DNA from: Pocillopora damicornis
Lineage: Eukaryota
NCBI RefSeq assembly: GCF_003704095.1
Contig: NW_020846294.1
Span: 310,001-374,000, forward strand
Direction of reading: 5' to 3'
DNA: 64,000 bases
Every line of letters starts with the position of its first letter. Positions within the stretch are counted from its first letter, which is position 1. The position numbers and the translations under genes were made by a program. Shown here one piece after another: positions 1 to 42,251 of this stretch. The notes beneath the pieces were generated by a model. It ran no database searches. It had not been told where the DNA came from and was given only the letters and a program-made list of their open reading frames with translations.

Positions 1-1989
1 TACGAGCAAATCAGAACTTTTCTGAAAGGAAACAGTGAATTTGAAATCTCTCTGTTGGAGGTACACGGTACTTTTCCCTACCATTTACTCACTGACTTGC
101 TTTGCTATATTGAAAAATTTCGAGAAGCTCTCTATGTTGAGGAACTGGCACGAGCAAGAGTCCTCGCAGAATTAATGGCAGACAAGTACTCCGTGGAAAG
201 CCACCTCTCAGCTGATCCACAATCATGGTTCGGGATTGAAAACATTGTGAGGAGAGAAAGTGACTGTGTTTTCCTGTACATTTCGTACAGAGAGCGGCAT
301 CTTCTTCTCTGGGTATTGAAAACAAATGGAGACACTTGCTTTCGCAAAACTGACAAAGTGGAACTAGACACTCTTATTGACGAGCAAGTTTGCGATGTGG
401 AAGGAATTTTCAAAAAGAGTGCCGCTGGCTTCGGCGTTTTACCCACAGAGAACTGCGAAGATCGATCTTTGGATGACAACGTGACGAAATCTCTTCATAA
501 AGAGAGCCGAGCAAATTTGCGAGGTGAACAAACCAAAGATACTGAAAGAATTCATAAATTGTGCTACAAATGGATCGTCGCACCCGTGGCAGACTTACTT
601 ACAGAGCCCGAAATCATCATTGTGCCGGATCGTTTTTCGTACCGAGTCCCATTTGCTGCCTTGCGTGATGAATCTGCCGGAAAGTATTTATCGGAGAAGT
701 ACAGAATCCGTATCTTCCCTTCACTAACGACTCTCCGAATCATTCAAGAATGTCCAGCGGACTATCACAGTCTAACTGATGCGCTGGTTGTGGGTGATCC
801 TACGGTCGGCGAAGTGCATTACAATGGACGTCTCACTAACTTTACACCATTGCGCTGTGCAAGAAAGGAAGCAGAGATGGTTGGTCGACTGCTGGGCGTT
901 CAGCCTTTGTTAGGAAGTGGCGCAACAAAGCAGGCAGTACTTAAAGCGATACCTTCGGTAAGTCTGATACATCTTGCCGCTCATGGACATCCCGAAAGAG
1001 GAGAGATTGCCCTCTCTCCTCAACGCACTACTAACCATACTCCTCAAGAGGAAGACTACCTCCTGACTATGTCCGAAATTCAAGGAGTTCAAGTGCGAGC
1101 TAAACTGGTAGTACTCAGCTGTTGTCACAGTGGGCGGGGATTGGTTAAAAAGGAAGGAATCCTTGGAATCGCTCGTGCATTCTTAGCATCCGGTGCACGT
1201 TCGGTGTTGGTAGCATCCTGGGCTATAGAAGACGAAGCAACGGAGCAGCTCATGAATCATTTCTACGAACACCTTGTGCGTGGAGAAAGTGCCAGTGAGT
1301 CTCTTCACCAGGCCGTTCAATGGTTGAGAAGCAATGGTTTCCCCAAACCTTCCCAATGGGCTCCGTTTGTGCTGATAGGGGATAACGTGACATTTGATTT
1401 TATGAAAAAAGAGTAAGTCTGATTTTAATGAGCAATTTTCTATAATAAACCGATTAGCACACTTAACTTTTTCAATTCAACTTACTTTAGTCGGTTTTTG
1501 TTTGTTTGTTTGTTTGATTTTGTCTTTGTCTTTCATCCATAAAATGTCAAGAAAAAGAAGACGATTTTATTTAGGCTCAGAGCCAGAAGAATTTGATGAA
1601 TCGATTCCTCAATTGGCCTTGAAAAGGAGTTCCTTTTGCATGGAAGACATTCAGAAATAACTGCTCAAGGTTGAAACGATGCTAGACGCTATGACGATGA
1701 GAGTAATCTGAGAAATTTAAGCTGACTTTAAAAAAGTTAACTATATTTTTAAAAAAATCAACAACAATAACCAATTAAAGCATAATTTTGAAGTCACTTT
1801 CGCATAAATCATGGTATATTCGACAATAATTTGGAAAAGTTCGAAAATCATAGTCCATGACATTGAAGAAAAAGTAATTTCTTTCAAATGAACTTGATCC
1901 GTTTGCCTTTTCAGTTAAAATAGTGACAAATGTAAAATGTTTGTTTTTAGGAAAGAAGAACTCAAGGAGGACAAAAATGAAGCAAAGAT
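1..1989 (+). CDS. TPR-CHAT protein, copy 1 (5'-truncated by window edge): end of TPR region plus CHAT (caspase-HetF) protease domain; main exon <1..1412 and small terminal exon 1951..>1989
   Basis: Open frame from position 1, colinear with 8102-9635. CHAT motifs IIVPD..VPFAAL, HLAAHG, LVVLSCCHSG, FLASGARSVLVASW, WAPFVLIG. Donor GA|GTAAGT at 1412/1413 and acceptor TTTTTAG| at 1950 join in frame to KEELKEDKNEAKI. The unspliced form stops at 1416. Confidence 0.9.
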
Positions 1990-2089
1990 NNNNNNNNNNN
2001 NNNNNNNNNNNNNNNNNNNNNNNNNNNNNNNNNNNNNNNNNNNNNNNNNNNNNNNNNNNNNNNNNNNNNNNNNNNNNNNNNNNNNNNNN

Positions 2090-2717
2090 CGTTTGTGCTG
2101 ATGGGGGATAACGTGACATTTGATTTTACGAAAAAAGGGTAAGTCAGATTGTAATGAGCAATTTTCTATAATAACCNNNNNNNNNNCTTAACTTTTTCAG
2201 TTCAACACATAATAGTCGGTTTTTGTTTGTTTTTGTCTTTGTCTCTCATCCATAAAATGTAAAGAAAAAGAAGACGATTTCATTTCGTGCTCAGAGNNNN
2301 NNNNNNTTTATGAATCGCTACCTTAATTGGCCTTGAAAAAGAGTTCCTTTTACATGCAAGATATTCAGAAATAACTGCAGGAGGTTGATACGATGCTAGA
2401 CGCTATGACGNNNNNNNNNNTCTGAGAAACTTCAGCTGACTTTAAAAAAGTTAACTTTATTTTGTAAAAAATCTACAACAGTAACCAATTAAACCATCAT
2501 TTTGAAGTCACTTTCGCGTAAATTATGGCATATGCAACAATAATTTGNNNNNNNNNNAAAATCATAGTCCATGACATTGAAGAAAAAATTGATTTCTTTC
2601 AAATGAACTTGATCCGTTTGCCCTTTCAGTTAAAATATTGACAAATGTAGAATGTTTTTTTTCAGGAAAGAAGAACTCAAGGAGGACAAAAATGAAGCAA
2701 AGATTGGAGCAGAGTGA
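2090..2717 (+). CDS. TPR-CHAT copy 2, 3' fragment only (FVLMGDNVTFDFTKKG, donor at 2138/2139, terminal exon 2666..2717 KEELKEDKNEAKIGAE*)
   Basis: Follows a 100-N gap. Colinear with copy 1 (1364-1989) but with many substitutions. Could be a separate paralog or an allelic haplotype. Confidence 0.6.
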
Positions 2718-5700
2718 NNNNNNNNNNNNNNNNNNNNNNNNNNNNNNNNNNNNNNNNNNNNNNNNNNNNNNNNNNNNNNNNNNNNNNNNNNNNNNNNNNN
2801 NNNNNNNNNNNNNNNNNNNNNNNNNNNNNNNNNNNNNNNNNNNNNNNNNNNNNNNNNNNNNNNNNNNNNNNNNNNNNNNNNNNNNNNNNNNNNNNNNNNN
2901 NNNNNNNNNNNNNNNNNNNNNNNNNNNNNNNNNNNNNNNNNNNNNNNNNNNNNNNNNNNNNNNNNNNNNNNNNNNNNNNNNNNNNNNNNNNNNNNNNNNN
3001 NNNNNNNNNNNNNNNNNNNNNNNNNNNNNNNNNNNNNNNNNNNNNNNNNNNNNNNNNNNNNNNNNNNNNNNNNNNNNNNNNNNNNNNNNNNTCCTCGGTT
3101 TACATCACCATGATCTGGTTTTCAATTCTCTCGTAGCATGCAGACCCGATCATCAAAGAGTTATGAAAATCTGTTGTAGGTATAGGAGATATTAACAAGA
3201 AACAAACGGAAGAGAAAAGTAGGCGTTACTATATCAAAATCTAAAAGATAAACGGAGAAGGGAACAGACAGANNNNNNNNNNNNNNNNNNNNNNNNNNNN
3301 NNNNNNNNNNNNNNNNNNNNNNNNNNNNNNNNNNNNNNNNNNNNNNNNNNNNNNNNNNNNNNNNNNNNNNNNNNNNNNNNNNNNNNNNNNNNNNNNNNNN
3401 NNNNNNNNNNNNNNNNNNNNNNNNNNNNNNNNNNNNNNNNNNNNNNNNNNNNNNNNNNNNNNNNNNNNNNNNNNNNNNNNNNNNNNNNNNNNNNNNNNNN
3501 NNNNNNNNNNNNNNNNNNNNNNNNNNNNNNNNNNNNNNNNNNNNNNNNNNNNNNNNNNNNNNNNNNNNNNNNNNNNNNNNNNNNNNNNNNNNNNNNNNNN
3601 NNNNNNNNNNNNNNNNNNNNNNNNNNNNNNNNNNNNNNNNNNNNNNNNNNNNNNNNNNNNNNNNNNNNNNNNNNNNNNNNNNNNNNNNNNNNNNNNNNNN
3701 NNNNNNNNNNNNNNNNATAAATACAACTTATATAGAAAAGTGACTGCAAATAAGACGGAATCTTTAGAATGGTACAAAGCTCTAGGAAGGGATCAAGTAA
3801 ATTTTTGCTGCGACACAACTAAAATTCTNNNNNNNNNNNNNNNNNNNNNNNNNNNNNNNNNNNNNNNNNNNNNNNNNNNNNNNNNNNNNNNNNNNNNNNN
3901 NNNNNNNNNNNNNNNNNNNNNNNNNNNNTCTTATAGGCAAGCTGTAATGCAAGTTCCATCCTCCTTAGGTTTTTACAATGATCACTTTTTACCGATAATT
4001 TTCATATTCGATCTTTCATTAACTCTTTGCATTCTTCGTTACTTTGCAGAGAAAATTTGAAATCAGTTCCATGATTTTGGTCTTCTACCTATCAAGAGAT
4101 CATTTCTTCTTGAAAGGTGAGCGGCTAAATATTTATTTCAGAAATATAGCGCGCTGAAATGTTTACGATTGCAACTTAATAATGATAGAGATAAATACTT
4201 GTGAATGATGAGTCTGTTTACTCTCACGACTTGATTGCTGTACGGTACATTGATATTGTAAGGAGAAACTACATATTCATCACTACTGTGACGATGTAAA
4301 ATAAGAAGATGCCATATGTTATTTCATGAATCTTATGAGCAACCTGGGAAACAATTTTTCTTCCATCTCAGGTTTTATTTTTTTCATTTTGGTGATTTCT
4401 TGTTACCAACCGTGTGAGTAAAATGTTGTTACACCAGCTATTTGTATATACGTTTGTTTTTCTGGGAAAGTCGAATTTCATTTTTTTACTTTCGTTTTCA
4501 TAAGTCACACCATCAAAATCTGTCGGCAGGGTCTGTGTTCAAAGGTGAACTGTTCCCCTTTTTTTAAAATTTCTATATTTTGATTACTTCTTAATTTCAT
4601 TTTCCATGAATAAAATTGATCTTCTTATTTTAACGAACAAAAAATTTGGAGAACTTGGTATAAGTTGTCGAAGTAACGAGAATGTAATTGAATGAAATGA
4701 AAAGATTTTATTTCATAAATACAGAGATTCACAGTGTAAAGTGCTATCGTTCCGGTTGTACGAACGTTATGTTTTCACAGTCGTTCGCTTTCCACTTTAA
4801 AGTGTAAATTTCAGTTCATATGTGTGAAAGATAAGACATCATATATGGAAAGTACTTGAATGATTTTTATTCACTTGTTGCGATGCATGAAAAACTCAAT
4901 CGTTCGCTGTAAAATTCACGCGTCACATATTAATTTTGGCCTTAATCACGTATCACGTGTAAACCCTTTGGTACCCCCTTTTCAAAATTCAGTTTGACTG
5001 CTCTCGTATGACACTGCAATGAGGTTCAGAAATAGAAATTGCAATTGAAAGTTTCGCGCGACTGTGATAGTTTTCAGGATTAATTGCCAAAACAATTCAA
5101 GCAAGGAAAACCCACTTCCCCAAGTCGACCTTCCTATCCGCCAACCACTATAAAGTGTGAGAAGGACGGTTTTTCCGAATCTTAATATAACTTTCAGCAG
5201 GATAAAACACAGCGAAAGAATGCCAAAAAAAGGGAACATCCCATTTACTTTAATATTTCAATTGTCAAGGGTCGATATGAATTTTATTCACTCAAAGAAT
5301 CTTCAACTTTAAGCTGAGAATCAGGTCAAGTAAAGAACTATACGACTTTAGCTTAAGCGAGTGACAAGAGCGTGCATGCAGGCGGAAAAGCGCCTGTGCA
5401 AGATGAGTAGGAAATAAGAACCTCCTTTATAAAGCAAAGACAATTGTACCGCCATTTCCCGTCATAATGAAATAAGTGACGGCTTACGCTTGCATAGTCT
5501 CTCCTGATTGAAATGACTGAAACGATTTTCTTCTAGAGAAGTCAAAATATTTCTTTAAAACTGATACGTACGAAAAACATTAATGCCATTATTTCAATTA
5601 AAAAGTCGAAGAAAACCTACTTCCTCGGGCGAAAGCGTTATAGAAATTTTGTCCTGTTTTATCTGCCAGGCAGCTTGGTAATCTGTCCAAAACACGCGCA

Positions 5701-6085
5701 AGACGCTCGTGACGCATGGAAGGTACCCATTTAAATTGTCCCATACTATCCCGTGCTATCATCGTATAATCCATAGAAGTTCCAGAGAAAATCATATTGA
5801 TGTACATTTTTTGGGTTGAATTCAAAAGTCTGCCGACTTTTTCTGCTAATTTTTCTTCTAGCAGTAAATCGAAATCAGACTCAATAATAACTAATTTTAA
5901 TAGCATGAAATGAGTGAAAAAAAACACGTTCAATGCAAACATAACACGATTCGTAACTGCTGTTCAGCCAATTCCCTAAAAAAGCTCAAGGATTCCACAA
6001 ATCAGTGTTTATTTCAATTTTTTTAAAGTTTTCCTTTTTGTTAATTCTTTGTCACGAAAAACAAAAAAAAAAACAGGAAAGACTC

Positions 6086-9000
6086 ATGATGAGTGACGCT
6101 GCAGAAATCCTAAAGTCAGTCCAGATAGGTTTAAATGTCGTCATATTTCTTCTCAACACTGATCGTGGCCTACAAGCGACTGAGTTATGTAATGAATGCA
6201 CAAGTCTACTTCAAAACCTTGACTGTGGTAGTCACCTTAATATCTCTGTTGTAATATCCAATGCATGCTACGCCATGTCTGGTAACGCAAATGCGGAACT
6301 ATATACCAAGAGACTTCTTTACACCTTGCACCACGCTGGAAGACTAACCATTCAACTGGGAGACAAATATAAAGCCCAGTGCGGGTTTGTAGAGGCAAAG
6401 CAACTTTACAATAGCGCACTCATCATCATGCAAACGATTGGTCACAAAAGAGAAGAAGCAATGGCACATCAAAGACTTGGAACTGTATGTATAAGCCTCA
6501 GTGAAATGCAGAAGGCAAAAAAACACCTCGAGAAAGCAGTCATCATCGCGATAGAAACTGGTGACAGACAAGCAGAAGGAAAGAGTAAAGGGAACCTCGG
6601 AAATATGTTTTATCACCTTGGCAAATATCAGAAGGCTGAGGAATGTTACAAGGAAGCACTTGCCATTGCGATAGAAATTGGTCACAGACAAGGAGAAAGC
6701 ACTAGTTACGGGAGCCTCGGAGATGTGTTTAATTCCCTAGGAGAATATCAGAAGGCTAAAAAATATTACAAGAAAGCACTTGCTATCGCGATAGAAATTG
6801 GCGACAGATGTGGTGAAGGAACAGTTAACGGGAAACTCGGAGATGTGTTTCACTCCTTTGGCAAATATGAGAAGGCTAAGGAATGTCACAAGAAAGCACT
6901 TGCCATTGCGATAGAAATTGGCCACAGACAAGAAGAAGAAACAATAAACGGGAACCTCGGAAATGTGTTTAATTCCTTAGGCGAATATCAGAAGGCTAAA
7001 GAATATTACGAGAATGCACTCGCCATCGCGATGGAAATTGGCAACAGAAAAGGAGAAGGAACAAGTATCGGGAACCTCGGAACTGTATTTAATTCCCTAG
7101 GCGAATATCAGAAGGCTCGAGAATATTTCGAGAAATCACTTGCCATAGCGATAGAAATTGGCGACAGACAAGGAGAGGGAACAGTTAACGGGAACCTCGG
7201 AGATCTGTTTCATTCCCTTGGCAAATATCAGAAGGCTAAAGAGTGTCACCAGAAAGCACTAGCTATTGCGATAGAAATTGGCGACAGAAAAGGAGAAGAA
7301 ACAATTTACGGGAACCTCGGCGATATGTTTAGTTCCCTAGGGGAATATCAGCGGGCTAAAGAATGTTCCGAGAAAGCACTTGCCATCGCGGTAGAAATTG
7401 GTGACAGACGAGGCGAAGGAAAAATTAACGGGAAACTCGGAAATGTGTTTCGTTCCCTTAGCGAATATCAGAAGGCTAAAGAATATAACGAGAAAGCACT
7501 TGCTATCGCGATAGAAATTGACGACAAACAAGGAGAAAAAGTAAGTAACGGGAACCTCGGAAATGTGTTCATGTCCCTTGGCGAATATCAGAAGGCTAGA
7601 GTATATTACGACAAAGCACTTGCCATCGCGATAGAAATCGGCGAGAGAAAAGGAGGGTTATTCTTAAGCCTTGGAAATGTTTATTTTAAGCTTCGAAAAA
7701 ATCGGCAAGCTAAAGAATATTTGGACAAGGCAGTTGGCATCAGTATAGCAAGTGGTGACAGAATACTAGGAGCCTACGCTACTGCAAGTTTGGCAGCTGT
7801 TTTTGCTTCAGTGAATGACTGTCAGAAAGCAAAAGAACATTTTGAGAAGGCGCTTACCATCAGCAGAGAATGTGGCTGTAGAAAAGTCGAGGCAATCATT
7901 TACATAAGCCTTAGCAATTTGTACCAATCGCTTGGTGAATGTAGCAAGGCAGAAGATTGTATTGAGAAAGCCTATTCCATAAGCAGCCAAATCGGAGACA
8001 AGATGCTTGAGTTTGAAAGCCTTCTCAGTATTACTCAACTAAAGATATGGCAGTCAGAGGTTGTGGAAGCAAAGGAATATCTCCTTCAATGTATTGCAAA
8101 ATACGAGCAAATCAGAACTTTTCTGAAAGGAAACAGTGAATTTAAAATTTCTCTGTTGGAGGAACACGGTACTTTTCCCTATCATTCACTCACTAACTTG
8201 CTGTGCTACATTGAAAAATTTGGAGATGCTCTCTATGTTGAGGAACTGGGACGAGCAAGGGTCCTCGCAGAATTAATGGCAGACAAGTATTCGGTGGAGA
8301 GCCACATCTCAGCTGATCCACAATCATGGTTCGGGATTGAAAACATCGTGAGGAGAGAAAATGACTGTGTTTTCTTGTATATTGCGTACAGAGAGCGGCG
8401 TGTTCTTCTCTGGGTATTGAGAGCAAATGGAGGCACTTGCTTTCGAAAAACAGATGAAGTGGAAGTAAACACTCTTATTGACGAGCAAGTTTGCGATGTG
8501 GAAGGCATTTTCAAAAAGAGCGCCGCTGGCTTTGGCGTTTTACCCACGGCAAACTGCGAAGATCGATCTTTGGATGACAAAGTGACGACATCTCTTCATA
8601 AGGAGAGCCGAGCACATTTGCGAGGTGGACAAACTAAAGATACCGAAAGAATTCATGATTTGTGCTACAAATGGTTCGTCGCACCCGTGGCAGACTTACT
8701 TACAGAGCCTGAAATCATCATTGTGCCGGATCGTTTTTCGTACCGAGTCCCATTTGCTGCCTTGCGTGATGAATCTGCCGGAAAGTATTTATCGGAGAAG
8801 TACAGAATCCGTATCGTCCCTTCACTGACGACTCTCCGAATCATCCAAGAATGTCCAGCGGACTATCACAGTCTAACTGATGCACTGGTTGTGGGTGATC
8901 CTACGGTCGGCGAAGTGCACTACAATGGACGTCTCACTGAAATTACACCATTGCTCTGTGCAAGAAAGGAAGCCGAGATGGTTGGTCGACTGCTGGGTGT

Positions 9001-9655
9001 TCAGCCTTTGTTAGGAAGTGGCGCAACAAAGCAGGCAGTACTGCAAGCGATANNNNNNNNNNNNNNNNNNNNNNNNNNNNNNNNNNNNNNNNNNNNNNNN
9101 NNNNNNNNNNNNNNNNNNNNNNNNNNNNNNNNNNNNNNNNNNNNNNNNNNNNCAACAAAGCAGGCAGTACTTCAAGCGATACCTTCGGTAAGTCTGATAC
9201 ATCTTGTCGCACATGGAAATGCCGAAAGAGGAGAGATTGCCCTCTCTCCTCAACGTACCACTAACAATACTCCTGAAGAGGAAGACTACCTCCTGACTAT
9301 GTCCGAAATTCTAGGAGTTCAAGTGCGAGCTAAACTGGTAGTACTCAGCTGTTGTCACAGTGGGCGCGGATTGGTTAAAAAGGAAGGAGTCCTCGGAATC
9401 GCTCGTGCATTCTTAGCATCCGGTGCACGTTCAGTGTTGGTAGCATCGTGGGCTCTAGAAGACGAAGCAACGGCGAAGCTCATGAAGCATTTCTACAAAC
9501 ACCTTGTGGGTGGAGAAAGTGCCAGTGAGTCTCCTCACCAGGCCGTTCAATGGTTGAGAAGCAATGGCTATTCTAAACCTTCCCAATGGGCTCCGTTTGT
9601 GCTGATGGGGGATAACGTGACATTTGATTTTATGAATTATAAACCAATATCATAA
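6086..9655 (+). CDS. TPR-CHAT protein, copy 3 (TTC28-like): ~14 TPR units followed by CHAT protease domain, single large coding exon
   Basis: ORF 6005..9655; likely start ATG 6086 or 6089 after a candidate acceptor CAG at 6075-6077. 40-aa GNLG..F.SLGEYQKA repeats. CHAT motifs HLVAHG and LSCCHSG. Interrupted by a 100-N gap (9053-9152) whose flanks overlap. Confidence 0.92.
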   Translation: MMSDAAEILKSVQIGLNVVIFLLNTDRGLQATELCNECTSLLQNLDCGSHLNISVVISNACYAMSGNANAELYTKRLLYTLHHAGRLTIQLGDKYKAQCGFVEAKQLYNSALIIMQTIGHKREEAMAHQRLGTVCISLSEMQKAKKHLEKAVIIAIETGDRQAEGKSKGNLGNMFYHLGKYQKAEECYKEALAIAIEIGHRQGESTSYGSLGDVFNSLGEYQKAKKYYKKALAIAIEIGDRCGEGTVNGKLGDVFHSFGKYEKAKECHKKALAIAIEIGHRQEEETINGNLGNVFNSLGEYQKAKEYYENALAIAMEIGNRKGEGTSIGNLGTVFNSLGEYQKAREYFEKSLAIAIEIGDRQGEGTVNGNLGDLFHSLGKYQKAKECHQKALAIAIEIGDRKGEETIYGNLGDMFSSLGEYQRAKECSEKALAIAVEIGDRRGEGKINGKLGNVFRSLSEYQKAKEYNEKALAIAIEIDDKQGEKVSNGNLGNVFMSLGEYQKARVYYDKALAIAIEIGERKGGLFLSLGNVYFKLRKNRQAKEYLDKAVGISIASGDRILGAYATASLAAVFASVNDCQKAKEHFEKALTISRECGCRKVEAIIYISLSNLYQSLGECSKAEDCIEKAYSISSQIGDKMLEFESLLSITQLKIWQSEVVEAKEYLLQCIAKYEQIRTFLKGNSEFKISLLEEHGTFPYHSLTNLLCYIEKFGDALYVEELGRARVLAELMADKYSVESHISADPQSWFGIENIVRRENDCVFLYIAYRERRVLLWVLRANGGTCFRKTDEVEVNTLIDEQVCDVEGIFKKSAAGFGVLPTANCEDRSLDDKVTTSLHKESRAHLRGGQTKDTERIHDLCYKWFVAPVADLLTEPEIIIVPDRFSYRVPFAALRDESAGKYLSEKYRIRIVPSLTTLRIIQECPADYHSLTDALVVGDPTVGEVHYNGRLTEITPLLCARKEAEMVGRLLGVQPLLGSGATKQAVLQAIXXXXXXXXXXXXXXXXXXXXXXXXXXXXXXXXXXTKQAVLQAIPSVSLIHLVAHGNAERGEIALSPQRTTNNTPEEEDYLLTMSEILGVQVRAKLVVLSCCHSGRGLVKKEGVLGIARAFLASGARSVLVASWALEDEATAKLMKHFYKHLVGGESASESPHQAVQWLRSNGYSKPSQWAPFVLMGDNVTFDFMNYKPIS
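6565..7644 (+). repeat. Coding tandem repeat: nine 120-bp TPR units
   Basis: GGAACCTCGG-like anchor recurs at 6591, 6711, 6831, 6951, 7071, 7191, 7311, 7431 and 7551. Confidence 0.95.
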
Positions 9656-10146
9656 GTGCACTTAAATTTTCAGTTGAAGACATAATAGTCAGTTTTTGTT
9701 ATTTTTTTGTTTTATTCCTTGTCTTTCATCTATGAATTGTCAAGAAAAAGAAGACGATTTTATCTAGCACCGGAGCCATAAGATTTTGATGAATCGCTTC
9801 CTAAATTGGCCTTGAGAAAGAGTTTCTTTTGCATGGAAGATATTCAGGAATAACTGCTGGAGGTTGATACGATGCTAGACGCTATGACGATAAATGTAAT
9901 CTGAGAAACTTAAGCTGACTTTAAAAAAGTTAACATTATTTTGTAAAAAATCAACAATAACCATAATGATTAAATCATAATTTTAAAGTCACTTTCGCAC
10001 CAATCACGGAATTTGACAATAATTTGGAGAGGTTAGAAATGACTGATGGCCAGTGACTTTGAAGGAAAAAGTAATTTCGTTGAAATTAACCTGTTCCGTT
10101 TGCTTTTAAGTTAAAATAGTGACAAATGTAGAATGTTTGTTTTTAG

Positions 10147-10198
10147 GAGAGAAGAACTCAAGGAGGACAACAATGAAGCAAAGATTGGAACAGAGTGA
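10147..10198 (+). other. Orphaned terminal exon of TPR-CHAT copy 3 (REELKEDNNEAKIGTE*)
   Basis: Homologous to 1951.. and 2666..2717 with intact acceptor TTTTAG at 10141-10146. The matching upstream donor is deleted in copy 3. Confidence 0.65.
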
Positions 10199-11783
10199 TG
10201 ACTGATCCGACATAAAGATTATCCTTCTTTTTATCTTCCATTTATCGTCTTTAAACGGATACTGGTATTATTTTGTAAAGACATTTCTAATTTGTTTCGA
10301 AGTCAAGAAGTCGTTTTGGCATGCCTTCGTAAACACGTTTGAATCGAAAGCGTGCGACTGAATAAAACCTGTAGTTCAGCCGTTAGATCTATTATGTATA
10401 TCATTAGGGGACAAAATTAACATTGAGATGAACGCAGGAAATAAGCTAAATGTTAGAAAACGAGAGAATATGGAAAAAGTTTCGTCAAAACTCAAAACTG
10501 ATCCTTGGTTAATATCACCATGATCTAGCTTTCAATTCTCCCGTAGCATGCAAACTTGATCATCAAAGAGTGATAAAAATTGTTCGCAAGTACAGGGGAT
10601 GATAACATAACGAACAAACGGAAGAGGGAACAAAAAGAACGTGAGATACTATATAATAATCTAAAAGATAAACGGAGAAGGGAAAAAACGAAATGAAATA
10701 CACTTAAAAATTAATTTCAAACAGAGAAGAAAAGAGAAACCAATGCAAATTGTTCAGGTAAAATTGGCCTAAAATATTGCGTGAGCTACTACGAAATAGT
10801 CAAACAGAAGAGTGCAAACAGTTTGTAGGAAATAACGGTGACAATCAGCCAGAATTCAGAGAAAAAAGTCTAGAAGCTAACTTAGATTGGAGAAAACAGC
10901 GAGGTAGATATTAACTTGGAAATCAAACACAGAAAATATAAAGTATTGTAGTAGATTCTAATGCAAAATTCAATCGGAGAAGAGAACGAACTATGCGCAA
11001 GATACAAACAAAACAACCTAACAGAGAAAAGACCAAACAGTGCGCAATATATCTGCAACAAACAAAAGAAAAGAGAGGAAAAAGTGGACTAGACATTGAT
11101 TGAAACGTCAGATTGGAAAGAAAAGGAACATTTGTTGCGTGAATCATTGAAGTTAAAGTCAATCAGAAGAAGAGAAGAAACAGTGTGCAAGATGTACAAA
11201 TGCCAAAAAATAAGTAAACGTAGGCATGCTAAGCATCCAAGACATTTTCTGGATGCGTAGGTTGAAATAGGACTCTTTAAGTAAATTTTTTTCTTTTTCG
11301 ATTTTGTAAACGATAAAAGAGCATAAACTTTCGTAGTTTCCAACATATACGCGGTTTGATAGAAAACAAAAATAACCCTTTAAGTTTATATAAAATAAAA
11401 CTCAGACACAGCTATTTAGGGTTTGTTGTCACAGTTGTCTGAACAATTTTAAGCAGAAAAGAACTTCATTGGCGCCACGCGTACAGTAGTCTCCTTCGTA
11501 GCAGGCTCTCACAACGGCGCCTCATCACGAGCGTTTTGTACCGCAGGAAGCAAACCAAAATTCTTAAATGACTTAATACTGTCGCATTCAAATGCACATT
11601 TAACATCCAACCGAAAAGTTATTTACTGCGCACAACAGGTGCTTAAAACATTCCTCTTGTTTCCCACCCCTCCCTCGAACTTTGGACTTGCCCAATAGGA
11701 TACGGTAGCAACAGGAGGTTTCACGCATGCGAATTTCAAAAACTCCTGTGGGGATCGAACCGAGACCAGAAATTATCACCTAC

Positions 11784-14700
11784 CGGAAGCCATTCACCAA
11801 TGTCACCAGTATGGAGCCAGTCATCCTCGTCAATAGTTTCGGCAGTTTTCTTAGGGTCGTGAAGGTAGCCTTTGAAGACGTTGGGACCTTTCAGACAAAT
11901 CTAGAAGAGCAAAATATTAATGATGATATTGCAGTTTAGTTGAGGTTAATACAAATTGATTTTGTTGCAACAAACGATTTGTTTTTCTTAAATGAGGTGA
12001 TCTTAAAAATCCAAGTATTGCTATATGTCAGTCCATTTTACCTCTCCCTGACCATTTTTAGCGTAGTATTCTTTCTCTTCCACGTCGACAAGCTTAATAA
12101 TGTTACAAGGAACTGGAGGGCCAACATGTCCGGCTGCAGAAAGAAGACAATTACAAATAAGTATATAACTATTGATGAGTCGGGTGGTCATTGGTCAATC
12201 AGTTGATATACTCCACCACCAATCAGTCAAACTTTCAATAAGTCAGTCACCTTGCCTATCAGTCAGTAAGGTAAACGTTCAATCAACCGATTAATTTATC
12301 AGTATTTAGAGGCTTGTCACTGAGTAAATCAAACAACTTGAAAAGGTATTACGCCAGCGGCTCAGTCGAACCAGTATATTCAGTGACTCACTAAAAGTCA
12401 GTCAAGCCGCTTGTCTGTTAGTTATTCTGTAAGTCAGTCATTGAGTCGGTCGGTCAGTCAGTCAGTCAGTCAATCAGCAAGTCAGTCAATCGGTCAGTCC
12501 GTCAGTCAGTCTGTTAGTCATTGAGTCAGTCAGTCATTCAGTCTGTCTGTCAGTCAGTCAGTCAGTCTGTCAGTAAGTCATTCGGTCAATCAGTGACTCA
12601 GTCCGTCAGTCAGTTAGTCAGTCGGTCTGTCTGTCGGTCGGTCGGACGGTCGGTCGGTCGGTCGGTCGGTCGGTCGGTCGGTCGGTCGGTCAGTCAGTCA
12701 GTCAACTTATCAGTTTGTCATTCAATCCATTCTTCAGTCTGTCAGTCAGTTGATCAGCTATTTAGTTATTCATCCAGCCGGCCAATCAGTCAGTCAGACG
12801 GTCAGTCAGCAAGTATCTCAGTCATTCAGTCAGTCATTCAGTCACTGACCCACTAGGTCAATTAGCCGGCCAGCCAGTCAGCCAGTTAGCCGGTCGGTTG
12901 GCGAGTCAGTTAGTCAGTCCGCGTGTCATTAGCGCAGCTCATCAGCCTCTGAGTCTGCCAATGACTTCCCCTTTTTGCCAAGAAACACACAAAGAGCTTG
13001 ACATACCTGTTGTGACGTCATTGAACAGCTGGAAGGTGGCAGCAGCTGTGCATTCGGTCTGACCGTAACCCTCGGTCAGCTGAGGAAACAAACGGCCAAC
13101 GATGTACGATAAAATTAACAATATCGAGAGGTAGTTCTGTTTTACTACCAGACAGCCAAGTTAGGCATAACTTGCTCGCCTACGATGACCCTTTTATCCT
13201 ACCCTTCCCATAAAATAGAGAAAATAAATACAGCTTTTGAGTAGCTTTTCGCCCTGAAAGATGTTAGATGTTTGGATACAAATAATCAACTCACGTGACA
13301 TCCCATGATGCATCTGATGAATGTCGTCACCTGAGCTGACAGAGGTGCGGAACCACAAGGCATGTATCGCACGTGACCACCAAGTAAACTCTGTCACGAA
13401 GAAGGAACATATCATGAAAGTTTTTTACTAAAGAATGAATTCGCATAAATACTTTACAATACCACACAGAATGCCTTAGAAACTAAGCAGGGGATAACGT
13501 TTTAAGTGAGAGAAGTGAAAAAAAGTGTAAGTGAGAGCGGGGAAAAAAATTGAAATGAAAGTATTGTCTTCCGATAAAATTTAGGTCGTTTTTGTCAAGA
13601 CTTGAGACAGAAATATTTCTCTTGATAATATTTAAAGGCTAATTATATGGAAATTTCAAGCGATTATCTTTGCAATAGAATAGACTTTGAGCTGAAAATA
13701 CTTTGTCGCTGCCCTTACCCTTGCTTGAGGCATTCATTCTACTACGTTCTGTGATTGGTTAAAAAAACCGCGTCGCCCGATCAAACAATCAGCATCAGAA
13801 CTGACGCCAATGCGCACGCGTCAGTTTTTCTGCATTTCTGATCTTTTGCTTTTTTGTGTTTTCTTTTTTATGTTGAGTCCTTTATAATCACAAAATGTTT
13901 GTAGCAATATTCTTCCTTGTTGTGATTAAATCGGTTTCGACTATATGACAGCTTCATCGAACCGGGCTCCAAGGAGAATATTTACTGGTTGATATATGTA
14001 TTAATGTATATTACCTGTATTTTACGCAGAACCAGATGATCCCATATCGTGTTCTTGCTGATGATTTGCCTTAGAAGGAAAAGTGTCATAATTCGATGTT
14101 TATGGTTTTGCATTCAGCCAAGCAATTCATAAATTTAAGTCATTTAGAACAACTCCCCTATTTTGCATATAGAAAGAAAATAAATCGAGAAGAACTTCCG
14201 TATGAGAAAACGAGGGTTTTTTCTTTTCCAGTGATCGCTTCAAAACAATTTCTCGTTACTACCATGATTAATGGAACCATCCGACTTCTGGCAAATTGTT
14301 TCGCAGCTTTGAAGTTAATGTGTTTTTTCGGTGTTACTCACCTTTTAAGATCATTTTCCTTAGACTTAAGTGCCATTTGAAAAATCCACTTCTTCAGTTT
14401 ACTCTTGGATACCTCAGACATGATCTATCGATTAAGAGAAAAACTTCTTTTCCCTTATATGCATGACATTCACGACGCAAATGACAGAAATCTGGTTTTG
14501 ATAGCATTTTTGCCTTTTTTTTTCTTCACTAATGACTATTTAGGCAAAAAGTGAGGCCAATTGAAAGTCAAAATCTCAATATAAGGAATTAGATGCCGAC
14601 AAAAATCGTTTGGTTGAACATTATCTCAACTCAAAATTCTCAGAGAAAATGTTTGTTTCAGAGTGCAAATAACAAACATCAACCCTTTTCACCCCGTTAG

Positions 14701-32357: not shown

Positions 32358-33290
32358 TGATGGCGGATGAAACCAACTGCAGAAAAATGGCTGAAGCTCA
32401 CCCTAAAGAACTCTCAAAATTCTGGCCTTCTTGGAAACTCTACCACTGTTTCAATTACAGTGCGAAACAGACGGACGAGGACAAATCTGAATTATATCAT
32501 TGCTAACATGGCGGCATCAGACTTGCTTATGTACGCATGTGAACCTTTACCGTTCCAAACAAACTATGGAAGATCGTACTTGATCCCCGTGCCTGACTGA
32601 TAGAATGGACTGTAGGGGCCATTTTGTGCGTGCTCTTTCATTTCTTCCTAGATCTTTGAATAGCTGTGTCGATTCAAAGCCTGGGTATCGTTTCAATAAA
32701 AAGGTACAGACCCATAGTGCATCCAATCCTCCCCGCAATCATCACGCCAAAACGATATAAATTGATCATTTCCTCAACATGGCTCGCATCTGTGTCGCTA
32801 CGTGGAATAGATTTCGACACCACTCGTCTTAACTCTCATAAAAACGCATTGACTTGTGATCTCAGTTAAGCCTGAGAGCTAACATTGACAATACCAAGAC
32901 ACAAGTGGAGTATAACACCGTGCTGTGAGTATCACCGGTTCTTGTACCTTTGTCTGTCATAACTTTCAGTTATTCAAAGACTTTCAGTTAGAGTCTGAAA
33001 AATAAAGAAGCTGTTATGAACTACTCTTCACAACAATTTCATTGGCAACGAGCTGAAAATACGAAATTTTTCAAGAACATTTGTACCATTGTGGTTTCAT
33101 TTTGCATGTTGCGTTTATCCAACTTATGTGTATGGGATTTTATTTTCTTTCGTGTTGAAATGGAAAATGCCATGTAATATGGACCAATATGGTGTCTTTT
33201 CTCATTTTGCCTTGAATTCAAACGCTACAATTTCCTCAGTGACGTCCGGTGTGTATAAACAGCTACCGCCGAGGGCTTTCAAAGTTACAT
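32358..33290 (+). pseudogene. Class A GPCR pseudogene, paralog of 41184..42251
   Basis: Colinear fragments in shifting frames: MADETNC, LLGNSTTVSITVRN..LNYIIANMAASDLL, SIQSLGIVSIKRYRPIVHP..ITPKR, FACCVYP..KWKMPCNMDQYGVFSHFALNSNATISS. Stops, frameshifts and a TM1 deletion. Confidence 0.85.
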
Positions 33291-35304: not shown

Positions 35305-37502
35305 ACCTGAATTAGCAGCGTTATCGTGCCATGAGATAAAGTTAAGTGAGGGTAAAGACACAATCAGTAAAAAGTACTGGTTGGATCCTACTGGCATTGG
35401 GAAACCAGCGTTGGTTTACTGTGATATGAAAATGGAAGGTAAGTGATATTTCCTTTAATAAAATTTGAACTAAAGCGCTCTTCGATTGAGTATCTTAAAA
35501 CGTAAAAACGAGCCAATCAGAAGGAAGGAAAATGCCTTTAAGAGCCAATGGGAACTCAGTGCAAACAACTAAACTTCTTAAAGCGCGGGAAGACGCGGGA
35601 AAATGCCGGCAACCCAGTCGTGATTAAAGCGGGTAAGTTTCCAAAGAAACTGTAGTTCTGCGTCTCTGGGAGAGTGTAACAGGGTAATTTATTATTATCA
35701 ACTGATTTGATAAAGTAAATTGGTCACCGTAAAGATTATCAAAGCTGACGTTTCATGCGTTAGCCGTTTCGTCAGAAGACCAAGTCGTGATTGGTTTTAT
35801 TTTTCATCTGATTGGTTGAGAAAGGGGCGTGCGTTTTCTGTACTAATCACAGAGCGAGGTAAAGCAAAACCGAAGCAATCACACTTGCCTATTTCTTAAT
35901 TTTTTTTTGTATGGAGCCGCTGGCTTTCTAAGTTTACTTTCAACTACTTTTCACTCAGATATTGATGAATGCAAAAGTGACAAACCGGTCTGTGACGTGA
36001 ATGCAAATTGCATCAACACCTATGGCTCATATAATTGCTCCTGCAAAGAAGGATATACTTGGGATGGACGATCATGTTTAGGTAAAAACGAAGTGATTTT
36101 TAATTGCGCTTACTTTTTCGCTTCATTTAATAAATAGATTATGCGATGCCGTGCGCCTGCCAAATAATATATTATAGCTTACGTGAAAATGGGGTAAGAG
36201 CAAAAGAGCGGTACACGAAAAGCGGCCGGGTGAGTTACCGATGTTCTTACCACATGTTGACGTCTTTTGTGATCTATCACTGGACAGAAAAAATAGCAAC
36301 AGGAAATATATTTGTTTGATACGATGAAAAATAAAATGTTGTTAATGGTGACGTCATCTAAGCGTCTGCCTTCCGATAGACCATATATAAGAACCAATCA
36401 AAATGCGTGTATAATTCGGCTCATCAAATAATAATTTATTTATCATACGATACTTCTGCTTAAGTGGAAGACGTGTTGGTAATGTGAATGGAAACTGCAC
36501 CATCACAGGTTTTAAAGCAAACATAAAATTTTCTATTTCTTTTTTTTTTTTAAAAAAAAGCTCTTCGTCATCCCTCCGTATCGTTTATGCGTCGGGTTTA
36601 AGTAGGCGACCATTTTTTGTTATCCACCACGCAGTGAAACCTCAAGTACGATGGTTGTTCTTAACCTGATAAACGTATCTTCCCACAGAAACTCAGCGTA
36701 GGCAAAAGTCAACGCGAGTTACAAAACTGCCGAAAAAATAAGATCATTGGAGAAAATGCGTATTGTTCTTGCGACATTTAATTACAGCAGAAACGAACTT
36801 ATAGAGCAGTGATATTAGCAACAAAACGTGTACTCGTTGATTTTTATTGCACGATATTACGCGCGTTTTCTTCCGCATGGAATACTTCCCTAGCTCATTG
36901 ACTTATTTAGGAAGGAGTGGCGGGGGAAGAGGAACAAATGCCTCTTAATTCGTAGCTTTCTGCTCGATCTCTCTGAAACTCCTGCAATCAACAAACACGT
37001 TACGTCATTGCAAACCCATGATGGTTTAAAATTTGAAAGTTTCAAATCATTAATCGTAAGGAATTCCGAACCGAAATCCACACGTCACATGACAATAAAC
37101 CCTTATTTACGACCACGATTGCCATTTCATCTTCTAGCCGATGCATGTTTCCACTACAAAAATCTGAGTGACGCTACAAGAAAGAGCACATACAACACAA
37201 GCCATGACGTCTATGATGACGACAAACTCCCTATGGGCTGGTACCGTTTTATGGGAGCCGCAGGAACAAAAATGCCAACAAAGTGTGTTCCGGAATTCAG
37301 ATGTGGCACATATTGGTCGGGCTGGCTTAAAGGTAACCTTCCTACAGTGGAAGATGGTGAAGTAACTAGGACGGTATGCTTTAGAAGAGGCTCCTGTTGC
37401 AGGTATACAGTGAAAATTTCTGTGAAAAGCTGTGGATCCTATTATATATACAAACTCTTTGCGACACCATATAGTAATATGCGCTATTGTGGTTCAGACT
37501 GA
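35305..37502 (+). CDS. Uromodulin/GP2-like protein without ZP domain: SCxEIK..YWLDP..VYCDM module + Ca-binding EGF + D8C/D10C domain (5' end lost in gap)
   Basis: Exons <35305..35438 (donor G|GTAAGT), 35959..36081 (DIDEC..CINTYGSYNCSCKEGY), 37138..37502 (GWYRFMGAAGTKMPTKC..CGSYYIYKL..RYCGSD*). All phase-1 junctions. Confidence 0.85.
35626..35778 (-). mobile_element. Short Penelope/retrozyme-type insertion carrying a minimal hammerhead ribozyme motif
   Basis: Minus strand CTGACGA-AACGGCTAACGCAT-GAAAC-GTC (35775..35747). Flanked by a 14-bp direct repeat ACCCAGTCGTGATT (35612-35625) / ACCAAGTCGTGATT (35779-35792). Confidence 0.65.
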
Positions 37503-41183: not shown

Positions 41184-42251
41184 TCAAACTGATGAAAAGC
41201 TTGTAATCCCCGAATCTCTTACACTTATTCGCTCGTTTCCGCGGTGGATTGAAGCTTTTTTTAATTCTAAATCATCCAAGTTTGAAATGTTTCCGACGCC
41301 GTCTTTTCCCCAAAAATGTTTTGATACTGTCTTCAACATGTCCTTTAAACCTTGGCGATATCTGTCAAAACGCACCAATGAAATGATGGGGGATATGGCA
41401 GAGTTTGAAATTAAAGCGAACCTTGAGAACACACCAAACTGAATCATATTACAAGGAGGTTTCCATTTCCACACGAAGTAAAACAAAATGGCAAAAATGT
41501 CAATTGGGAGGACACAACATGCAAATGCGATCATAATAGCACATACGTTCTTAAAAACTCTGCTGTTTTCGGCGCGATGCTGGGAAACCTCTGAATTTCT
41601 CAGAACCCAAAGAATTCGTGAGTAAGTAAAAATTGTGAAGCAAAAAGGTAGGAACACATTTAAAACCAAAACCACTGCCACAAATCGCTCCATCGTTTGA
41701 CGATTGTCAAATTGTGGGTCCCAGCGGAAGTCGCAGGTTGTTCTATTGTTAACAGACTCGAGGCGAGCGGCGTAGAAATATATTCCGTGTAGGGATACAG
41801 ATGCAAGCCATATAAGTGGAATGATGAATTTACATCTCTTTGGTGTAATGACTGCGGGGCGAAACGGATATACTATCGCCCTATATCTTTCCATAGAAAT
41901 AACAACTAAGCTTTGAATCGAAACAGCTGTTGAGATATCTTGGCAGAAAAACACAAGCTTGCATAAAATTAAGCCCATGATCCCATCGATTAGCCAAGCT
42001 CGTTCACCAAATATGACTTGGCACAGTTGATTTGGAACAGCGAAGATTGAGACCAGCAAGTCTGATGCTGCCATGTTTGCAATGAGGTAGTTTATTGAAG
42101 TCAATGTGCGGGAGTTTCGTGCAGTTATGGCGATAATGGCGGTATTTCCAAGTAGCGAAGTAATAAGTATCAAACTGTAACACAGAATCTTGACCAGTTT
42201 TATCGGAAAAGACTGGTCTTCCAGATTCCCACAAACAGTTGTGTTTGCCAT
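41184..42251 (-). CDS. Rhodopsin-like (class A) GPCR, neuropeptide-receptor-like orphan, 355 aa, single coding exon
   Basis: Seven hydrophobic segments; GN (TM1), NMAASD (TM2), ERY (TM3), W (TM4), ECL2 Cys. Start ATG 42251 (MANTT, N-glycosylation sequon) lies downstream of acceptor TTTTCTCGGCAG| at 42271. Confidence 0.92.
   Translation of the reverse strand: MANTTVCGNLEDQSFPIKLVKILCYSLILITSLLGNTAIIAITARNSRTLTSINYLIANMAASDLLVSIFAVPNQLCQVIFGERAWLIDGIMGLILCKLVFFCQDISTAVSIQSLVVISMERYRAIVYPFRPAVITPKRCKFIIPLIWLASVSLHGIYFYAARLESVNNRTTCDFRWDPQFDNRQTMERFVAVVLVLNVFLPFCFTIFTYSRILWVLRNSEVSQHRAENSRVFKNVCAIMIAFACCVLPIDIFAILFYFVWKWKPPCNMIQFGVFSRFALISNSAISPIISLVRFDRYRQGLKDMLKTVSKHFWGKDGVGNISNLDDLELKKASIHRGNERISVRDSGITSFSSV

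What the first reader, a model, noticed from the sequence alone, without database searches (positions are those of the whole stretch)
1..10198. Tandem array of apparently catalytically intact TPR-CHAT sensor-proteases: candidate animal innate-immune receptor system
Seen: at least two and probably three closely related TPR-CHAT genes in tandem. The two readable CHAT domains keep the caspase-fold dyad (HLAAHG/HLVAHG, His at 982-984; LSCC, Cys at 1123-1125). In copy 3 the TPR array and protease sit in one ~3.5-kb exon. Known: bacterial TPR-CHAT/CHAT proteases are ligand-gated defence effectors (Csx29 of type III-E CRISPR; CHAT proteases that cleave bacterial gasdermins). Inference: a duplicated, intron-poor, repeat-variable TPR sensor fused to a protease could act like an NLR-type receptor-executioner in a coral-like animal rather than as a housekeeping TTC28 ortholog. 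No substrate gene is visible in the window.
Basis: partly seen in the sequence, partly recalled or inferred. Interest (0 to 1): 0.85.

Follow-up and report, generated by a model that had tools for sequence, protein, structure and literature searches.

The report
Tandem coral TPR-CHAT protease genes
Two neighbouring coral genes each join a variable array of helical TPR repeats to a caspase-like CHAT protease with its catalytic residues in place, but they are ordinary members of a coral gene family of over 100 copies whose expansion is already published, and an immune-receptor role remains plausible and untested.

Summary
The window holds two real TPR-CHAT genes. Copy 1 (window 1-1412) is cut by the window start but complete in the contig. 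Copy 3 runs from 6086 to 9655. "Copy 2" (2090-2717) is only the last 16 codons, an intron and a short end exon, isolated among gaps. It is a third 3' end or a haplotype variant, not a readable gene.

They align with the catalytic H862/C907 of the solved CHAT protein DdvA. The 100-N gap at 9053-9152 is false: its flanks overlap and stay in frame.

These genes are not TTC28 orthologues. The genome has its own canonical TTC28 elsewhere, in a separate clade that mostly lacks the catalytic Cys. The window genes belong to a coral-expanded family with 138 CHAT matches in this genome. That expansion is published (2018, 2022, 2025).

New here:
- 60 of 68 family members keep the dyad.
- TPR hypervariable positions show dN/dS of about 2, against 0.34 elsewhere.
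- The C-terminal half models as a Csx29/separase-type module (Z 27).

A sensor-protease role is plausible but untested. The scan reached the same verdict on other DNA of this genome.

The parts
1..1412 (+). Copy 1: 3' part of the large coding exon, holding the separase-like module and the CHAT domain. The exon starts upstream of the window; the likely ATG is at L033:4868.
   Evidence: ORF and Pfam CHAT at 6e-55. The full 1212-codon frame is in L033. It is 99.8% identical over 7.2 kb to an independent contig.
982..984 (+). Copy 1 catalytic His codon (second His of HLAAHG).
   Evidence: It aligns with DdvA H862.
1123..1125 (+). Copy 1 catalytic Cys codon (second Cys of LSCCHSG).
   Evidence: It aligns with DdvA C907.
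1413..1950 (+). Copy 1 last intron (GTAAGT ... TTTTTAG). The mechanical stop codon at 1414-1416 lies inside the splice donor.
   Evidence: Sequence read directly. RNA contigs of three studies carry the spliced junction of this subfamily (loose ends at 9636).
1951..1989 (+). Copy 1 short end exon, cut by the assembly gap at 1990.
   Evidence: It is homologous to 2666-2717 and 10147-10198.
2090..2717 (+). 'Copy 2': an isolated 3' end. It holds 16 codons to 2138, an intron at 2139-2665, and an end exon at 2666-2717 with its stop at 2715-2717. It contains four 10-N runs.
   Evidence: Its last 160 nt are 95% identical to copy 1's 3' end and 88% to copy 3's.
6086..9655 (+). Copy 3 coding region from ATG to TAA, one open frame interrupted only by the false 100-N gap.
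6440..7639 (+). Copy 3 array of ten 40-residue TPR units. Copy 1 has eleven.
   Evidence: The 120-nt periodicity shows.
8186..9652 (+). Copy 3 separase/Csx29-type module: a pseudo-caspase half followed by the CHAT catalytic half.
   Evidence: Inferred by homology to the modelled copy 1 segment. Pfam CHAT matches.
9053..9152 (.). False assembly gap. The flanks repeat 29 nt (28 of 29 identical) and remain in frame.
9212..9214 (+). Copy 3 catalytic His codon, in the piece after the gap.
9353..9355 (+). Copy 3 catalytic Cys codon, in the piece after the gap.
10147..10198 (+). Copy 3's counterpart of the end exon, with its acceptor kept. The matching splice donor after FDF is lost, so copy 3 ends at its own stop codon (9653-9655).
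   Evidence: Sequence read directly. Homology.

Best explanation
These are two paralogous members of the coral-expanded TPR-CHAT ('TTC28-like') gene family, in a genome that matches Pocillopora damicornis.

Each gene encodes about 1,150-1,180 residues, almost all in one exon:
- an N-terminal helical region;
- ten or eleven 40-residue TPR units;
- further degenerate TPRs;
- a C-terminal module of about 480 residues built like separase and CRISPR Csx29, with a pseudo-caspase half and a CHAT catalytic half that keeps its His-Cys dyad.

Shown here: the architecture, the dyad, the fold, the family membership and the pattern of variation.

Inferred: the protein is a regulated cysteine protease. Its TPR superhelix would bind a partner through the variable helix-A face and control access to, or alignment of, the dyad, as in separase and Craspase. 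Different paralogs would recognise different partners.

The most likely biological setting is non-self, symbiont or stress sensing that leads to proteolytic signalling or cell death. That is a guess from analogy and from the evolutionary pattern.
For: Domains and dyad:
- Pfam finds TPR_12 plus CHAT.
They align with the experimentally defined H862/C907 of DdvA (PMC11506125).

Fold:
- The AlphaFold2 model of the last 482 residues has pLDDT 84 and pTM 0.89.
- It matches Csx29 at Z 27.4 over 358 residues, separase at Z about 25, DdvA at Z 21, gingipain at Z 18 and caspases at Z 11.

Family:
- The genome holds 138 CHAT matches.
- 60 of 68 readable family members keep both His and Cys.
- The window copies sit in a clade of coral paralogs, apart from the TTC28 clade (SH-aLRT 99).
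- Sampled TTC28 orthologues mostly lack the Cys.

Selection, copy 1 against copy 3:
- dN/dS is 0.26-0.42 in the protease module and 0.58 in the TPR array.
- At ten hypervariable TPR columns chosen from 1,074 units of other proteins, dN/dS is 1.98 against 0.34 elsewhere. Fisher p is 1e-5 for the contrast and 0.03 for a ratio above 1.

Expression:
- Spliced RNA contigs of this subfamily occur in three RNA studies.
- In P. damicornis, 56 TTC28-like genes changed expression after a bacterial treatment (PMC10668361).
- The expansion itself is published in PMC12314368, PMC9145168 and PMC6208414.
Against: - No protease activity, ligand or substrate is known for any animal TPR-CHAT.
- No candidate substrate or partner gene lies in the window.
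- The RNA contigs are short and cannot be assigned to these two copies. At copy 3's 3' end they follow a paralog's sequence instead.
- The dN/dS test compares repeat units that can be shuffled by unequal crossing-over, and it is only marginally above 1.
- Published authors also propose cell-cycle or apoptosis roles.
- About one in eight family members has lost a dyad residue. Most of those sit in short open frames, so part of the family is decaying.
Confidence: 0.55

Rival explanations
1. The genes are regulated proteases or scaffolds with endogenous roles in cell cycle, apoptosis or development, as proposed for TTC28/TPRBK. The expansion would reflect relaxed constraint and tandem duplication in unstable genome regions, not receptor diversification.
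For: - The Montipora and Acropora papers suggest cell-cycle roles, or simply 'functional diversity' (PMC9145168, PMC12314368).
- Overall dN/dS is below 1 in every region.
- Several family members are truncated or have lost the dyad.
- By sequence, the closest named relatives are animal TTC28 proteins.
Against: - Canonical TTC28 is kept as a separate single gene with a different architecture: about 2,370 residues, with CHAT in the middle.
- Canonical TTC28 mostly lacks the Cys.
- Variation in the window genes is concentrated at the helix-A positions of the TPR units, with dN/dS of about 2.
- The protease module is under purifying selection.
Confidence: 0.27
2. The tandem arrangement is partly an assembly artefact. 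'Copy 2' would be a haplotype variant of copy 1's 3' end. Copy 3 may be stitched from two haplotypes or paralogs. Copy 1 and copy 3 may not be direct neighbours.
For: - Five gaps lie between 1990 and 3928.
- The fragment and copy 1's flank break off at the same homologous point.
- The fragment is 95% identical to copy 1's end.
- The flanks of the 9053-9152 gap overlap with one mismatch. Identity to independent proteins drops from 98% to 90% across it.
- The independent contig L080 is 99.8% identical up to window 1989 but is not collinear afterwards.
- The best-matching Pocillopora meandrina locus holds one gene.
Against: - Copy 1 and copy 3 differ by dS 0.1-0.33 and by one whole TPR unit, far more than alleles usually do.
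- Both exist in independent assemblies: P0252 for copy 1, and P0249 and P0251 for copy 3.
- L080 also shows head-to-tail TPR-CHAT genes 6 kb apart.
- Tandem arrays of this family are documented in gap-free Acropora assemblies (PMC12314368).
Confidence: 0.13
3. The genes are orthologues of housekeeping TTC28.
For: Automatic annotation names relatives 'tetratricopeptide repeat protein 28-like'.
Against: - The genome's own TTC28 lies on contig C3436. It is 65% identical to Nematostella TTC28 and 43% to vertebrate TTC28.
- The TTC28 clade excludes the window copies.
- Architecture, length and copy number all differ.
Confidence: 0.02

Closest known systems
Coral-expanded TPR-CHAT domain-containing proteins ('TTC28-like'), described in Acropora, Montipora and Pocillopora (PMC12314368, PMC9145168, PMC6208414)
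   Same: They share the architecture (TPR array plus one C-terminal CHAT), tandem clusters, large copy number and variable TPR length. The window copies fall inside this clade.
   Different: Nothing essential differs. The papers do not discuss catalytic residues, the separase-like pseudo-caspase half or site-specific TPR variation. Those were examined here.
Canonical metazoan TTC28 (TPRBK)
   Same: It has TPR repeats of the same 40-residue type and a CHAT-family domain. It is the nearest named sequence relative outside the coral family.
   Different: - It is single-copy, multi-exon and about 2,300-2,700 residues long.
- CHAT sits in the middle, followed by a long C-terminal region.
- The catalytic Cys is absent in most sampled orthologues, including this coral's own.
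- It forms a separate clade.
Csx29 / TPR-CHAT of type III-E CRISPR (Craspase)
   Same: It has TPR repeats followed by a pseudo-caspase and caspase module. It is the best structural match (Z 27.4, 358 residues, rmsd 3.4). It is a protease switched on allosterically by a bound partner.
   Different: - No sequence-level match was found and identity is only 13-14%.
- There is no Cas7-11 or CRISPR context.
- It is bacterial.
- Its activation works through a partner complex, not a TPR-bound ligand of its own.
Separase
   Same: It has a helical repeat region followed by a pseudo-caspase and an active caspase-like domain (Z about 25). Its protease is held in check until released.
   Different: It is a single essential gene for cohesin cleavage. 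It has no hypervariable repeats and only 13-16% identity.
DdvA periplasmic TPR-CHAT (Myxococcus anti-sigma factor, 8rot)
   Same: It is the only solved chain found by sequence (E 1e-6). The dyad aligns residue for residue.
   Different: It is a membrane anti-sigma factor and a dimer, and it lacks the three-helix motif (PMC11506125).
NLR-type receptors (NACHT/NB-ARC with repeats)
   Same: Both pair a variable repeat sensor with a constant effector part, with lineage-specific tandem expansion.
   Different: The window genes have no NTPase domain, so any switch mechanism must differ.

Membership tests
CHAT domain (Pfam PF12770), clan CD caspase-like cysteine proteases | Profile match above the curated cut-off | tested here: met
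   Copy 1 scores 187 bits against a cut-off of 24. The two copy 3 pieces score 45 and 123 bits.
CHAT domain (Pfam PF12770), clan CD caspase-like cysteine proteases | Catalytic His and Cys at the family's positions | tested here: met
   HLAAHG and LSCCHSG align with H862/C907 of DdvA (PMC11506125). Both residues are invariant in the 25-sequence alignment A1.
CHAT domain (Pfam PF12770), clan CD caspase-like cysteine proteases | Caspase/separase-type fold | tested here: met
   Model pLDDT is 84. Matches are Csx29 at Z 27.4, separase at Z 25 and caspases at Z 11. The geometry of the dyad in the model could not be inspected.
CHAT domain (Pfam PF12770), clan CD caspase-like cysteine proteases | Proteolytic activity | not testable with these tools
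   This needs recombinant protein, wild type against a Cys mutant.
Coral-expanded TPR-CHAT ('TTC28-like') family | N-terminal TPR array with a single C-terminal CHAT | tested here: met
Coral-expanded TPR-CHAT ('TTC28-like') family | Placement among coral paralogs in a tree of the protease module | tested here: met
   The window copies group with a P. meandrina protein (support 99), inside a 36-row coral clade (support 99).
Coral-expanded TPR-CHAT ('TTC28-like') family | Many copies, often in tandem | tested here: met
   The genome holds 138 CHAT matches. Further TPR and TPR-CHAT frames lie 14-30 kb upstream on the same contig. Tandem genes also appear in L080.
Canonical TTC28 orthologue | Groups with TTC28 of other animals | tested here: not met
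   The TTC28 clade (17 rows, support 99) excludes the window copies. This genome's TTC28 is L076/P0121.
Canonical TTC28 orthologue | About 2,400 residues with CHAT in the middle and a long C-terminal region | tested here: not met
   In the window genes CHAT ends the protein at about 1,180 residues. In TTC28 it lies at about 1,100-1,700 of 2,300-2,700 residues.
Type III-E Craspase (Csx29) | Partnership with Cas7-11/gRAMP at a CRISPR locus | tested here: not met
   This is an animal genome. The neighbours are other TPR genes, a GPCR and a D8C-domain frame.
Type III-E Craspase (Csx29) | Sequence-level homology to Csx29 | tested here: not met
   A profile of 25 family members finds only DdvA among solved chains. 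The similarity to Csx29 is structural only.
NLR / STAND receptors | Central NACHT or NB-ARC NTPase domain | tested here: not met
   Pfam finds no such domain.

The most novel reading that the evidence does not exclude
Coral TPR-CHAT proteins form an NTPase-free class of animal receptor-executioners. Each paralog's hypervariable TPR face would bind a different microbial, symbiont or allogeneic ligand. Binding would release a separase/Craspase-like protease that starts signalling or cell death. The catalytically dead and truncated members would act as decoys or regulators. By contrast, canonical TTC28 would be the branch that lost catalysis and became a scaffold.
Probability: 0.25. Interest if true: 0.8.

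Novelty: new member of a known kind. Interest (0 to 1): 0.3.

Why it matters
If these proteases are ligand-gated, corals would have a large receptor family outside the NLR and TLR types, built like bacterial and cell-cycle TPR-CHAT proteases. That would bear on coral disease, symbiosis and bleaching.

As it stands, the locus adds no new kind of gene. What this follow-up adds is small and testable:
- The expanded family keeps the catalytic dyad, while canonical TTC28 mostly does not.
- Variation is concentrated on the expected binding face of the TPR units.
- The deposited gene model fuses two genes.

Tried and rejected
- **TTC28 orthology:** rejected.
- **A third full gene:** rejected as unsupported.
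- **Sequence homology to Csx29:** not found, either with one sequence or with a 25-member profile.
- **Expression of these two copies:** inconclusive. RNA-run contigs are 45-246 nt long and lie almost only on the open frame. At 9636 they follow a paralog's spliced 3' end, not copy 3's.
a genome search with the AMP-binding profile gave no match on this contig. Only the best candidates are scored, so this says little.
- **Tandem order in other assemblies:**
  - The P. meandrina locus holds one gene, only 87-88% identical, so it is not a strict orthologue.
  - The ENA contig L080 confirms copy 1 but not its downstream neighbour.
- **First dN/dS test on TPR columns:** I chose the columns from the same two genes (ratio 2.6). 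That is circular, so I replaced it with columns chosen from other proteins.
- **Steps not run:**
  - No N was filled, and the letters of other assemblies opposite the gaps were not read out.
  - For alignments, copy 3's two pieces were kept apart or joined with X.
  - The spliced model (large exon plus end exon) was not joined or searched as one sequence.
  - The whole-library representative search, the protein atlas and the complex prediction were not used, because none would change the verdict.


Full report
**What is in the sequence**

The first 10 kb of the window hold two long open frames on the + strand.
- Frame 55-1416 is a CHAT domain (PF12770, E 6e-55).
- Frame 6005-9655 carries TPR_12 in ten stretches, followed by CHAT split by a 100-N run.

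The window is G000:C2929:310001-374000. Fetching the contig upstream shows that copy 1 is a complete 1212-codon frame (L033:4778-8416). It has the same layout as copy 3 and a shared start, MSDAAEILK.

- 982-984 is the second His of HLAAHG.
- 1123-1125 is the second Cys of LSCCHSG.
- Copy 3 has the same residues at 9212-9214 and 9353-9355.

In the only solved chain found by sequence (DdvA, 8rot_B, E 1e-6), these two residues align with H862 and C907. The authors of that structure define H862/C907 as the CHAT catalytic dyad and mutated them (PMC11506125).

**Gaps, tested first**

The N runs are listed.

*The 1990-3928 interval.* Sequence 2090-2717 matches copy 1's own 3' end (1364-1989) collinearly across the four 10-N runs. 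None of those runs lies in coding sequence. This "copy 2" contains:
- only the last 16 codons of a CHAT gene;
- a GT...AG intron (2139-2665);
- a 17-codon end exon with its stop at 2715-2717.

Its last 160 nt are 95% identical to copy 1 and 88% to copy 3. Copy 1's flank and the fragment break off at the same homologous point. That pattern suggests an unresolved haplotype or paralog variant rather than a third gene. The 100-N placeholder at 1990-2089 cannot be sized.

*The 9053-9152 gap.* This gap is false.
- The 29 nt before it and after it are the same, 28 of 29 identical.
- Two proteins from independent assemblies (P0249 and P0251, 1142 aa) run across the junction. The flanks overlap by nine residues and nothing is missing.
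- Identity to those proteins is 98% before the gap but 90% after it. The post-gap piece carries copy 3's dyad and its odd C-terminus, so it may belong to another haplotype or paralog.

No N was filled.

**Gene structure**

- In copy 1 the mechanical stop TAA (1414-1416) lies inside a GTAAGT donor (exon end 1412).
- An acceptor at 1950 opens a short end exon (1951-1989, cut by the gap).
- RNA-library contigs from three studies match copy 3 up to 9636. They then continue with the spliced sequence (...FDFMKKG|KEELEED...) typical of copy 1 and the fragment.

So this subfamily is transcribed and spliced. The contigs cannot be assigned to either window copy. Copy 3 has lost the donor and ends at its own stop, while the acceptor and end exon survive at 10147-10198.

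**How real is the tandem pair**

Copy 1 and copy 3 differ by one whole 40-residue TPR unit. Their dS is 0.10 in CHAT, 0.21 in the middle region and 0.33 in the TPR array. That is far beyond usual allelic difference.

Both copies exist elsewhere.
- An ENA contig (L080) is 99.8% identical to the region from 5.2 kb upstream of the window to 1989.
- P0249 and P0251 match copy 3.
- DNA runs of two further studies hold about 0.6 of copy 3's sampled words.

Two points weaken the exact order given in the window.
- Downstream of copy 1, L080 carries 8 kb of repeat-rich DNA that is not collinear with window 1990-10900.
- L080 also has another TPR-CHAT gene 6 kb upstream of copy 1 that the window's contig lacks.

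So "tandem array" is right in kind, but the copy 1 to copy 3 adjacency rests on scaffolding over gaps. The best-matching P. meandrina locus holds one gene, 87-88% identical. The deposited NCBI model on this contig (P0241, 2278 aa) fuses copy 1 and copy 3 into one protein.

**What family it is**

A six-frame search of the genome with PF12770 gives 138 matches. About 55 of them are full-length and free of stops.

The genome's size and contig number (234 Mb, 4393 contigs) and a protein identical to a 'pdam' entry point to Pocillopora damicornis. Close homologues are Pocillopora, Stylophora and Oculina proteins, often named 'TTC28-like'.

The genome has its own canonical TTC28 on contig C3436 (L076; P0121, 2368 aa). 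It is 65% identical to Nematostella TTC28 and about 43% to vertebrate TTC28.

In a tree of the C-terminal module:
- the 17 TTC28 sequences form one clade (SH-aLRT 99);
- the window copies sit in a separate coral clade (support 99), next to a P. meandrina protein.

In TTC28 the CHAT region lies in the middle of a protein of about 2,400 residues. In the window genes it ends the protein.

At the catalytic Cys position, 15 of the 17 sampled TTC28 orthologues have another residue (Tyr in vertebrates, Ala in cnidarians). The spider and mantis-shrimp proteins keep Cys. Among 68 readable members of the expanded family in this genome, 60 keep both His and Cys, seven lack the Cys and one lacks the His. 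Most of the eight sit in short open frames.

**Structure**

An AlphaFold2 model of copy 1's last 482 residues, built with 24 paralogs as the alignment, has pLDDT 84 and pTM 0.89.

| Solved structure | Z |
|---|---|
| Csx29 (358 residues aligned, rmsd 3.4) | 27.4 |
| Separase | about 25 |
| DdvA | 21 |
| Gingipain | 18 |
| Caspases | 11 |

The "linker" before the Pfam CHAT match is therefore the pseudo-caspase half of a separase/Craspase-type module. By sequence, even a family profile finds only DdvA. The link to bacterial TPR-CHAT proteins is ancient and at fold level.

**Pattern of variation**

dN/dS between the two copies is 0.26-0.42 in the protease module and 0.58 in the TPR array.

Within the 40-residue unit, variability is concentrated at a few columns. 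To avoid circularity, I chose the ten most variable columns from 1,074 units of 119 other proteins: columns 4, 8, 9, 11, 15, 18, 24, 30, 37 and 38.
- At those columns copy 1 against copy 3 gives dN 0.43 and dS 0.22, a ratio of 1.98.
- Elsewhere the ratio is 0.34.
- Fisher p is 1e-5 for the contrast and 0.03 for a ratio above 1.

With the invariant Leu-Gly as TPR positions 7-8, several of these columns are helix-A positions 2, 3, 5, 9 and 12. From general knowledge of TPR structures, those positions face the ligand-binding groove. This fits a diversifying binding surface. Unit shuffling by unequal crossing-over could contribute. Cluster members of 1182 and 1142 residues differ by exactly one unit.

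**Comparison with the literature, and verdict**

The expansion is published.
- The P. damicornis genome paper noted coral-diversified TPR proteins with CHAT domains and guessed apoptosis or bleaching roles (PMC6208414).
- The Montipora paper separated an expanded TTC28-like group from canonical TTC28 (PMC9145168).
- The phased Acropora assemblies counted 276 and 304 TPR-CHAT genes, 362 in Pocillopora effusa, in tandem arrays within non-syntenic regions (PMC12314368). That paper says nothing about catalytic residues.
- In P. damicornis, 56 TTC28-like genes changed expression after treatment with a coral actinobacterium (PMC10668361).

Earlier follow-ups in this scan reached the same verdict on other DNA of this genome.

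The locus is a correct but ordinary example of a known family. A ligand-gated sensor-protease role remains a reasonable, untested idea.

Noticed in passing
contig C2929:307868-319655 (window up to 9655); protein P0241: The deposited NCBI gene model on this contig is a 2278-residue protein that joins copy 1 to copy 3. This is most likely two genes fused by the predictor, because copy 1's true end exon is cut by a gap.
   Followed up: partly
L076:4042-8853 (-) = G000:C3436, and TTC28 proteins P0121-P0240: At the catalytic Cys position, 15 of 17 sampled canonical TTC28 orthologues have another residue: Tyr in vertebrates, Ala in cnidarians. The spider and mantis-shrimp proteins keep Cys, and the His is kept. 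TTC28 may be a pseudo-protease in most animals, unlike the coral-expanded family.
   Followed up: partly
L032 (C2929:280001-290000) and L034:2815-4314 (-): 14-30 kb upstream on the same contig lie further family-like frames: a 1192-residue TPR-only frame, a 1362-residue TPR frame with only the first third of CHAT and no dyad region, and a 500-residue TPR frame. They may be truncated or decoy-like relatives.
   Followed up: partly
cluster of P0001 (P0248-P0253): Proteins at least 90% identical from independent assemblies come in two lengths, 1182 and 1142 residues, which differ by exactly one 40-residue TPR unit. The 1142-residue ones match copy 3.
   Followed up: partly
window 41184-42359 (-) and 32497-33235 (+): An intronless rhodopsin-family GPCR frame (7tm_1, E 6e-41) has a diverged inverted partial copy about 8 kb away, 69% identical.
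   Followed up: no
window 37008-37502 (+): An open frame with a uromodulin-like D8C domain (E 5e-13).
   Followed up: no
window 43828-47423: A direct repeat with a period of about 1.35 kb and two to three copies, 84-87% identical. Its content was not examined.
   Followed up: no
window 12396-12919: A short-period tandem repeat region, with copies about 68-73% alike at offsets of about 100-230 nt.
   Followed up: no
window 3092-3272 and 10502-10684: An element of about 180 nt recurs downstream of both gene copies (80% identical). It also lies downstream of the upstream gene in the independent contig L080 (96%). The duplicated unit therefore extends at least 1 kb beyond the coding region.
   Followed up: partly
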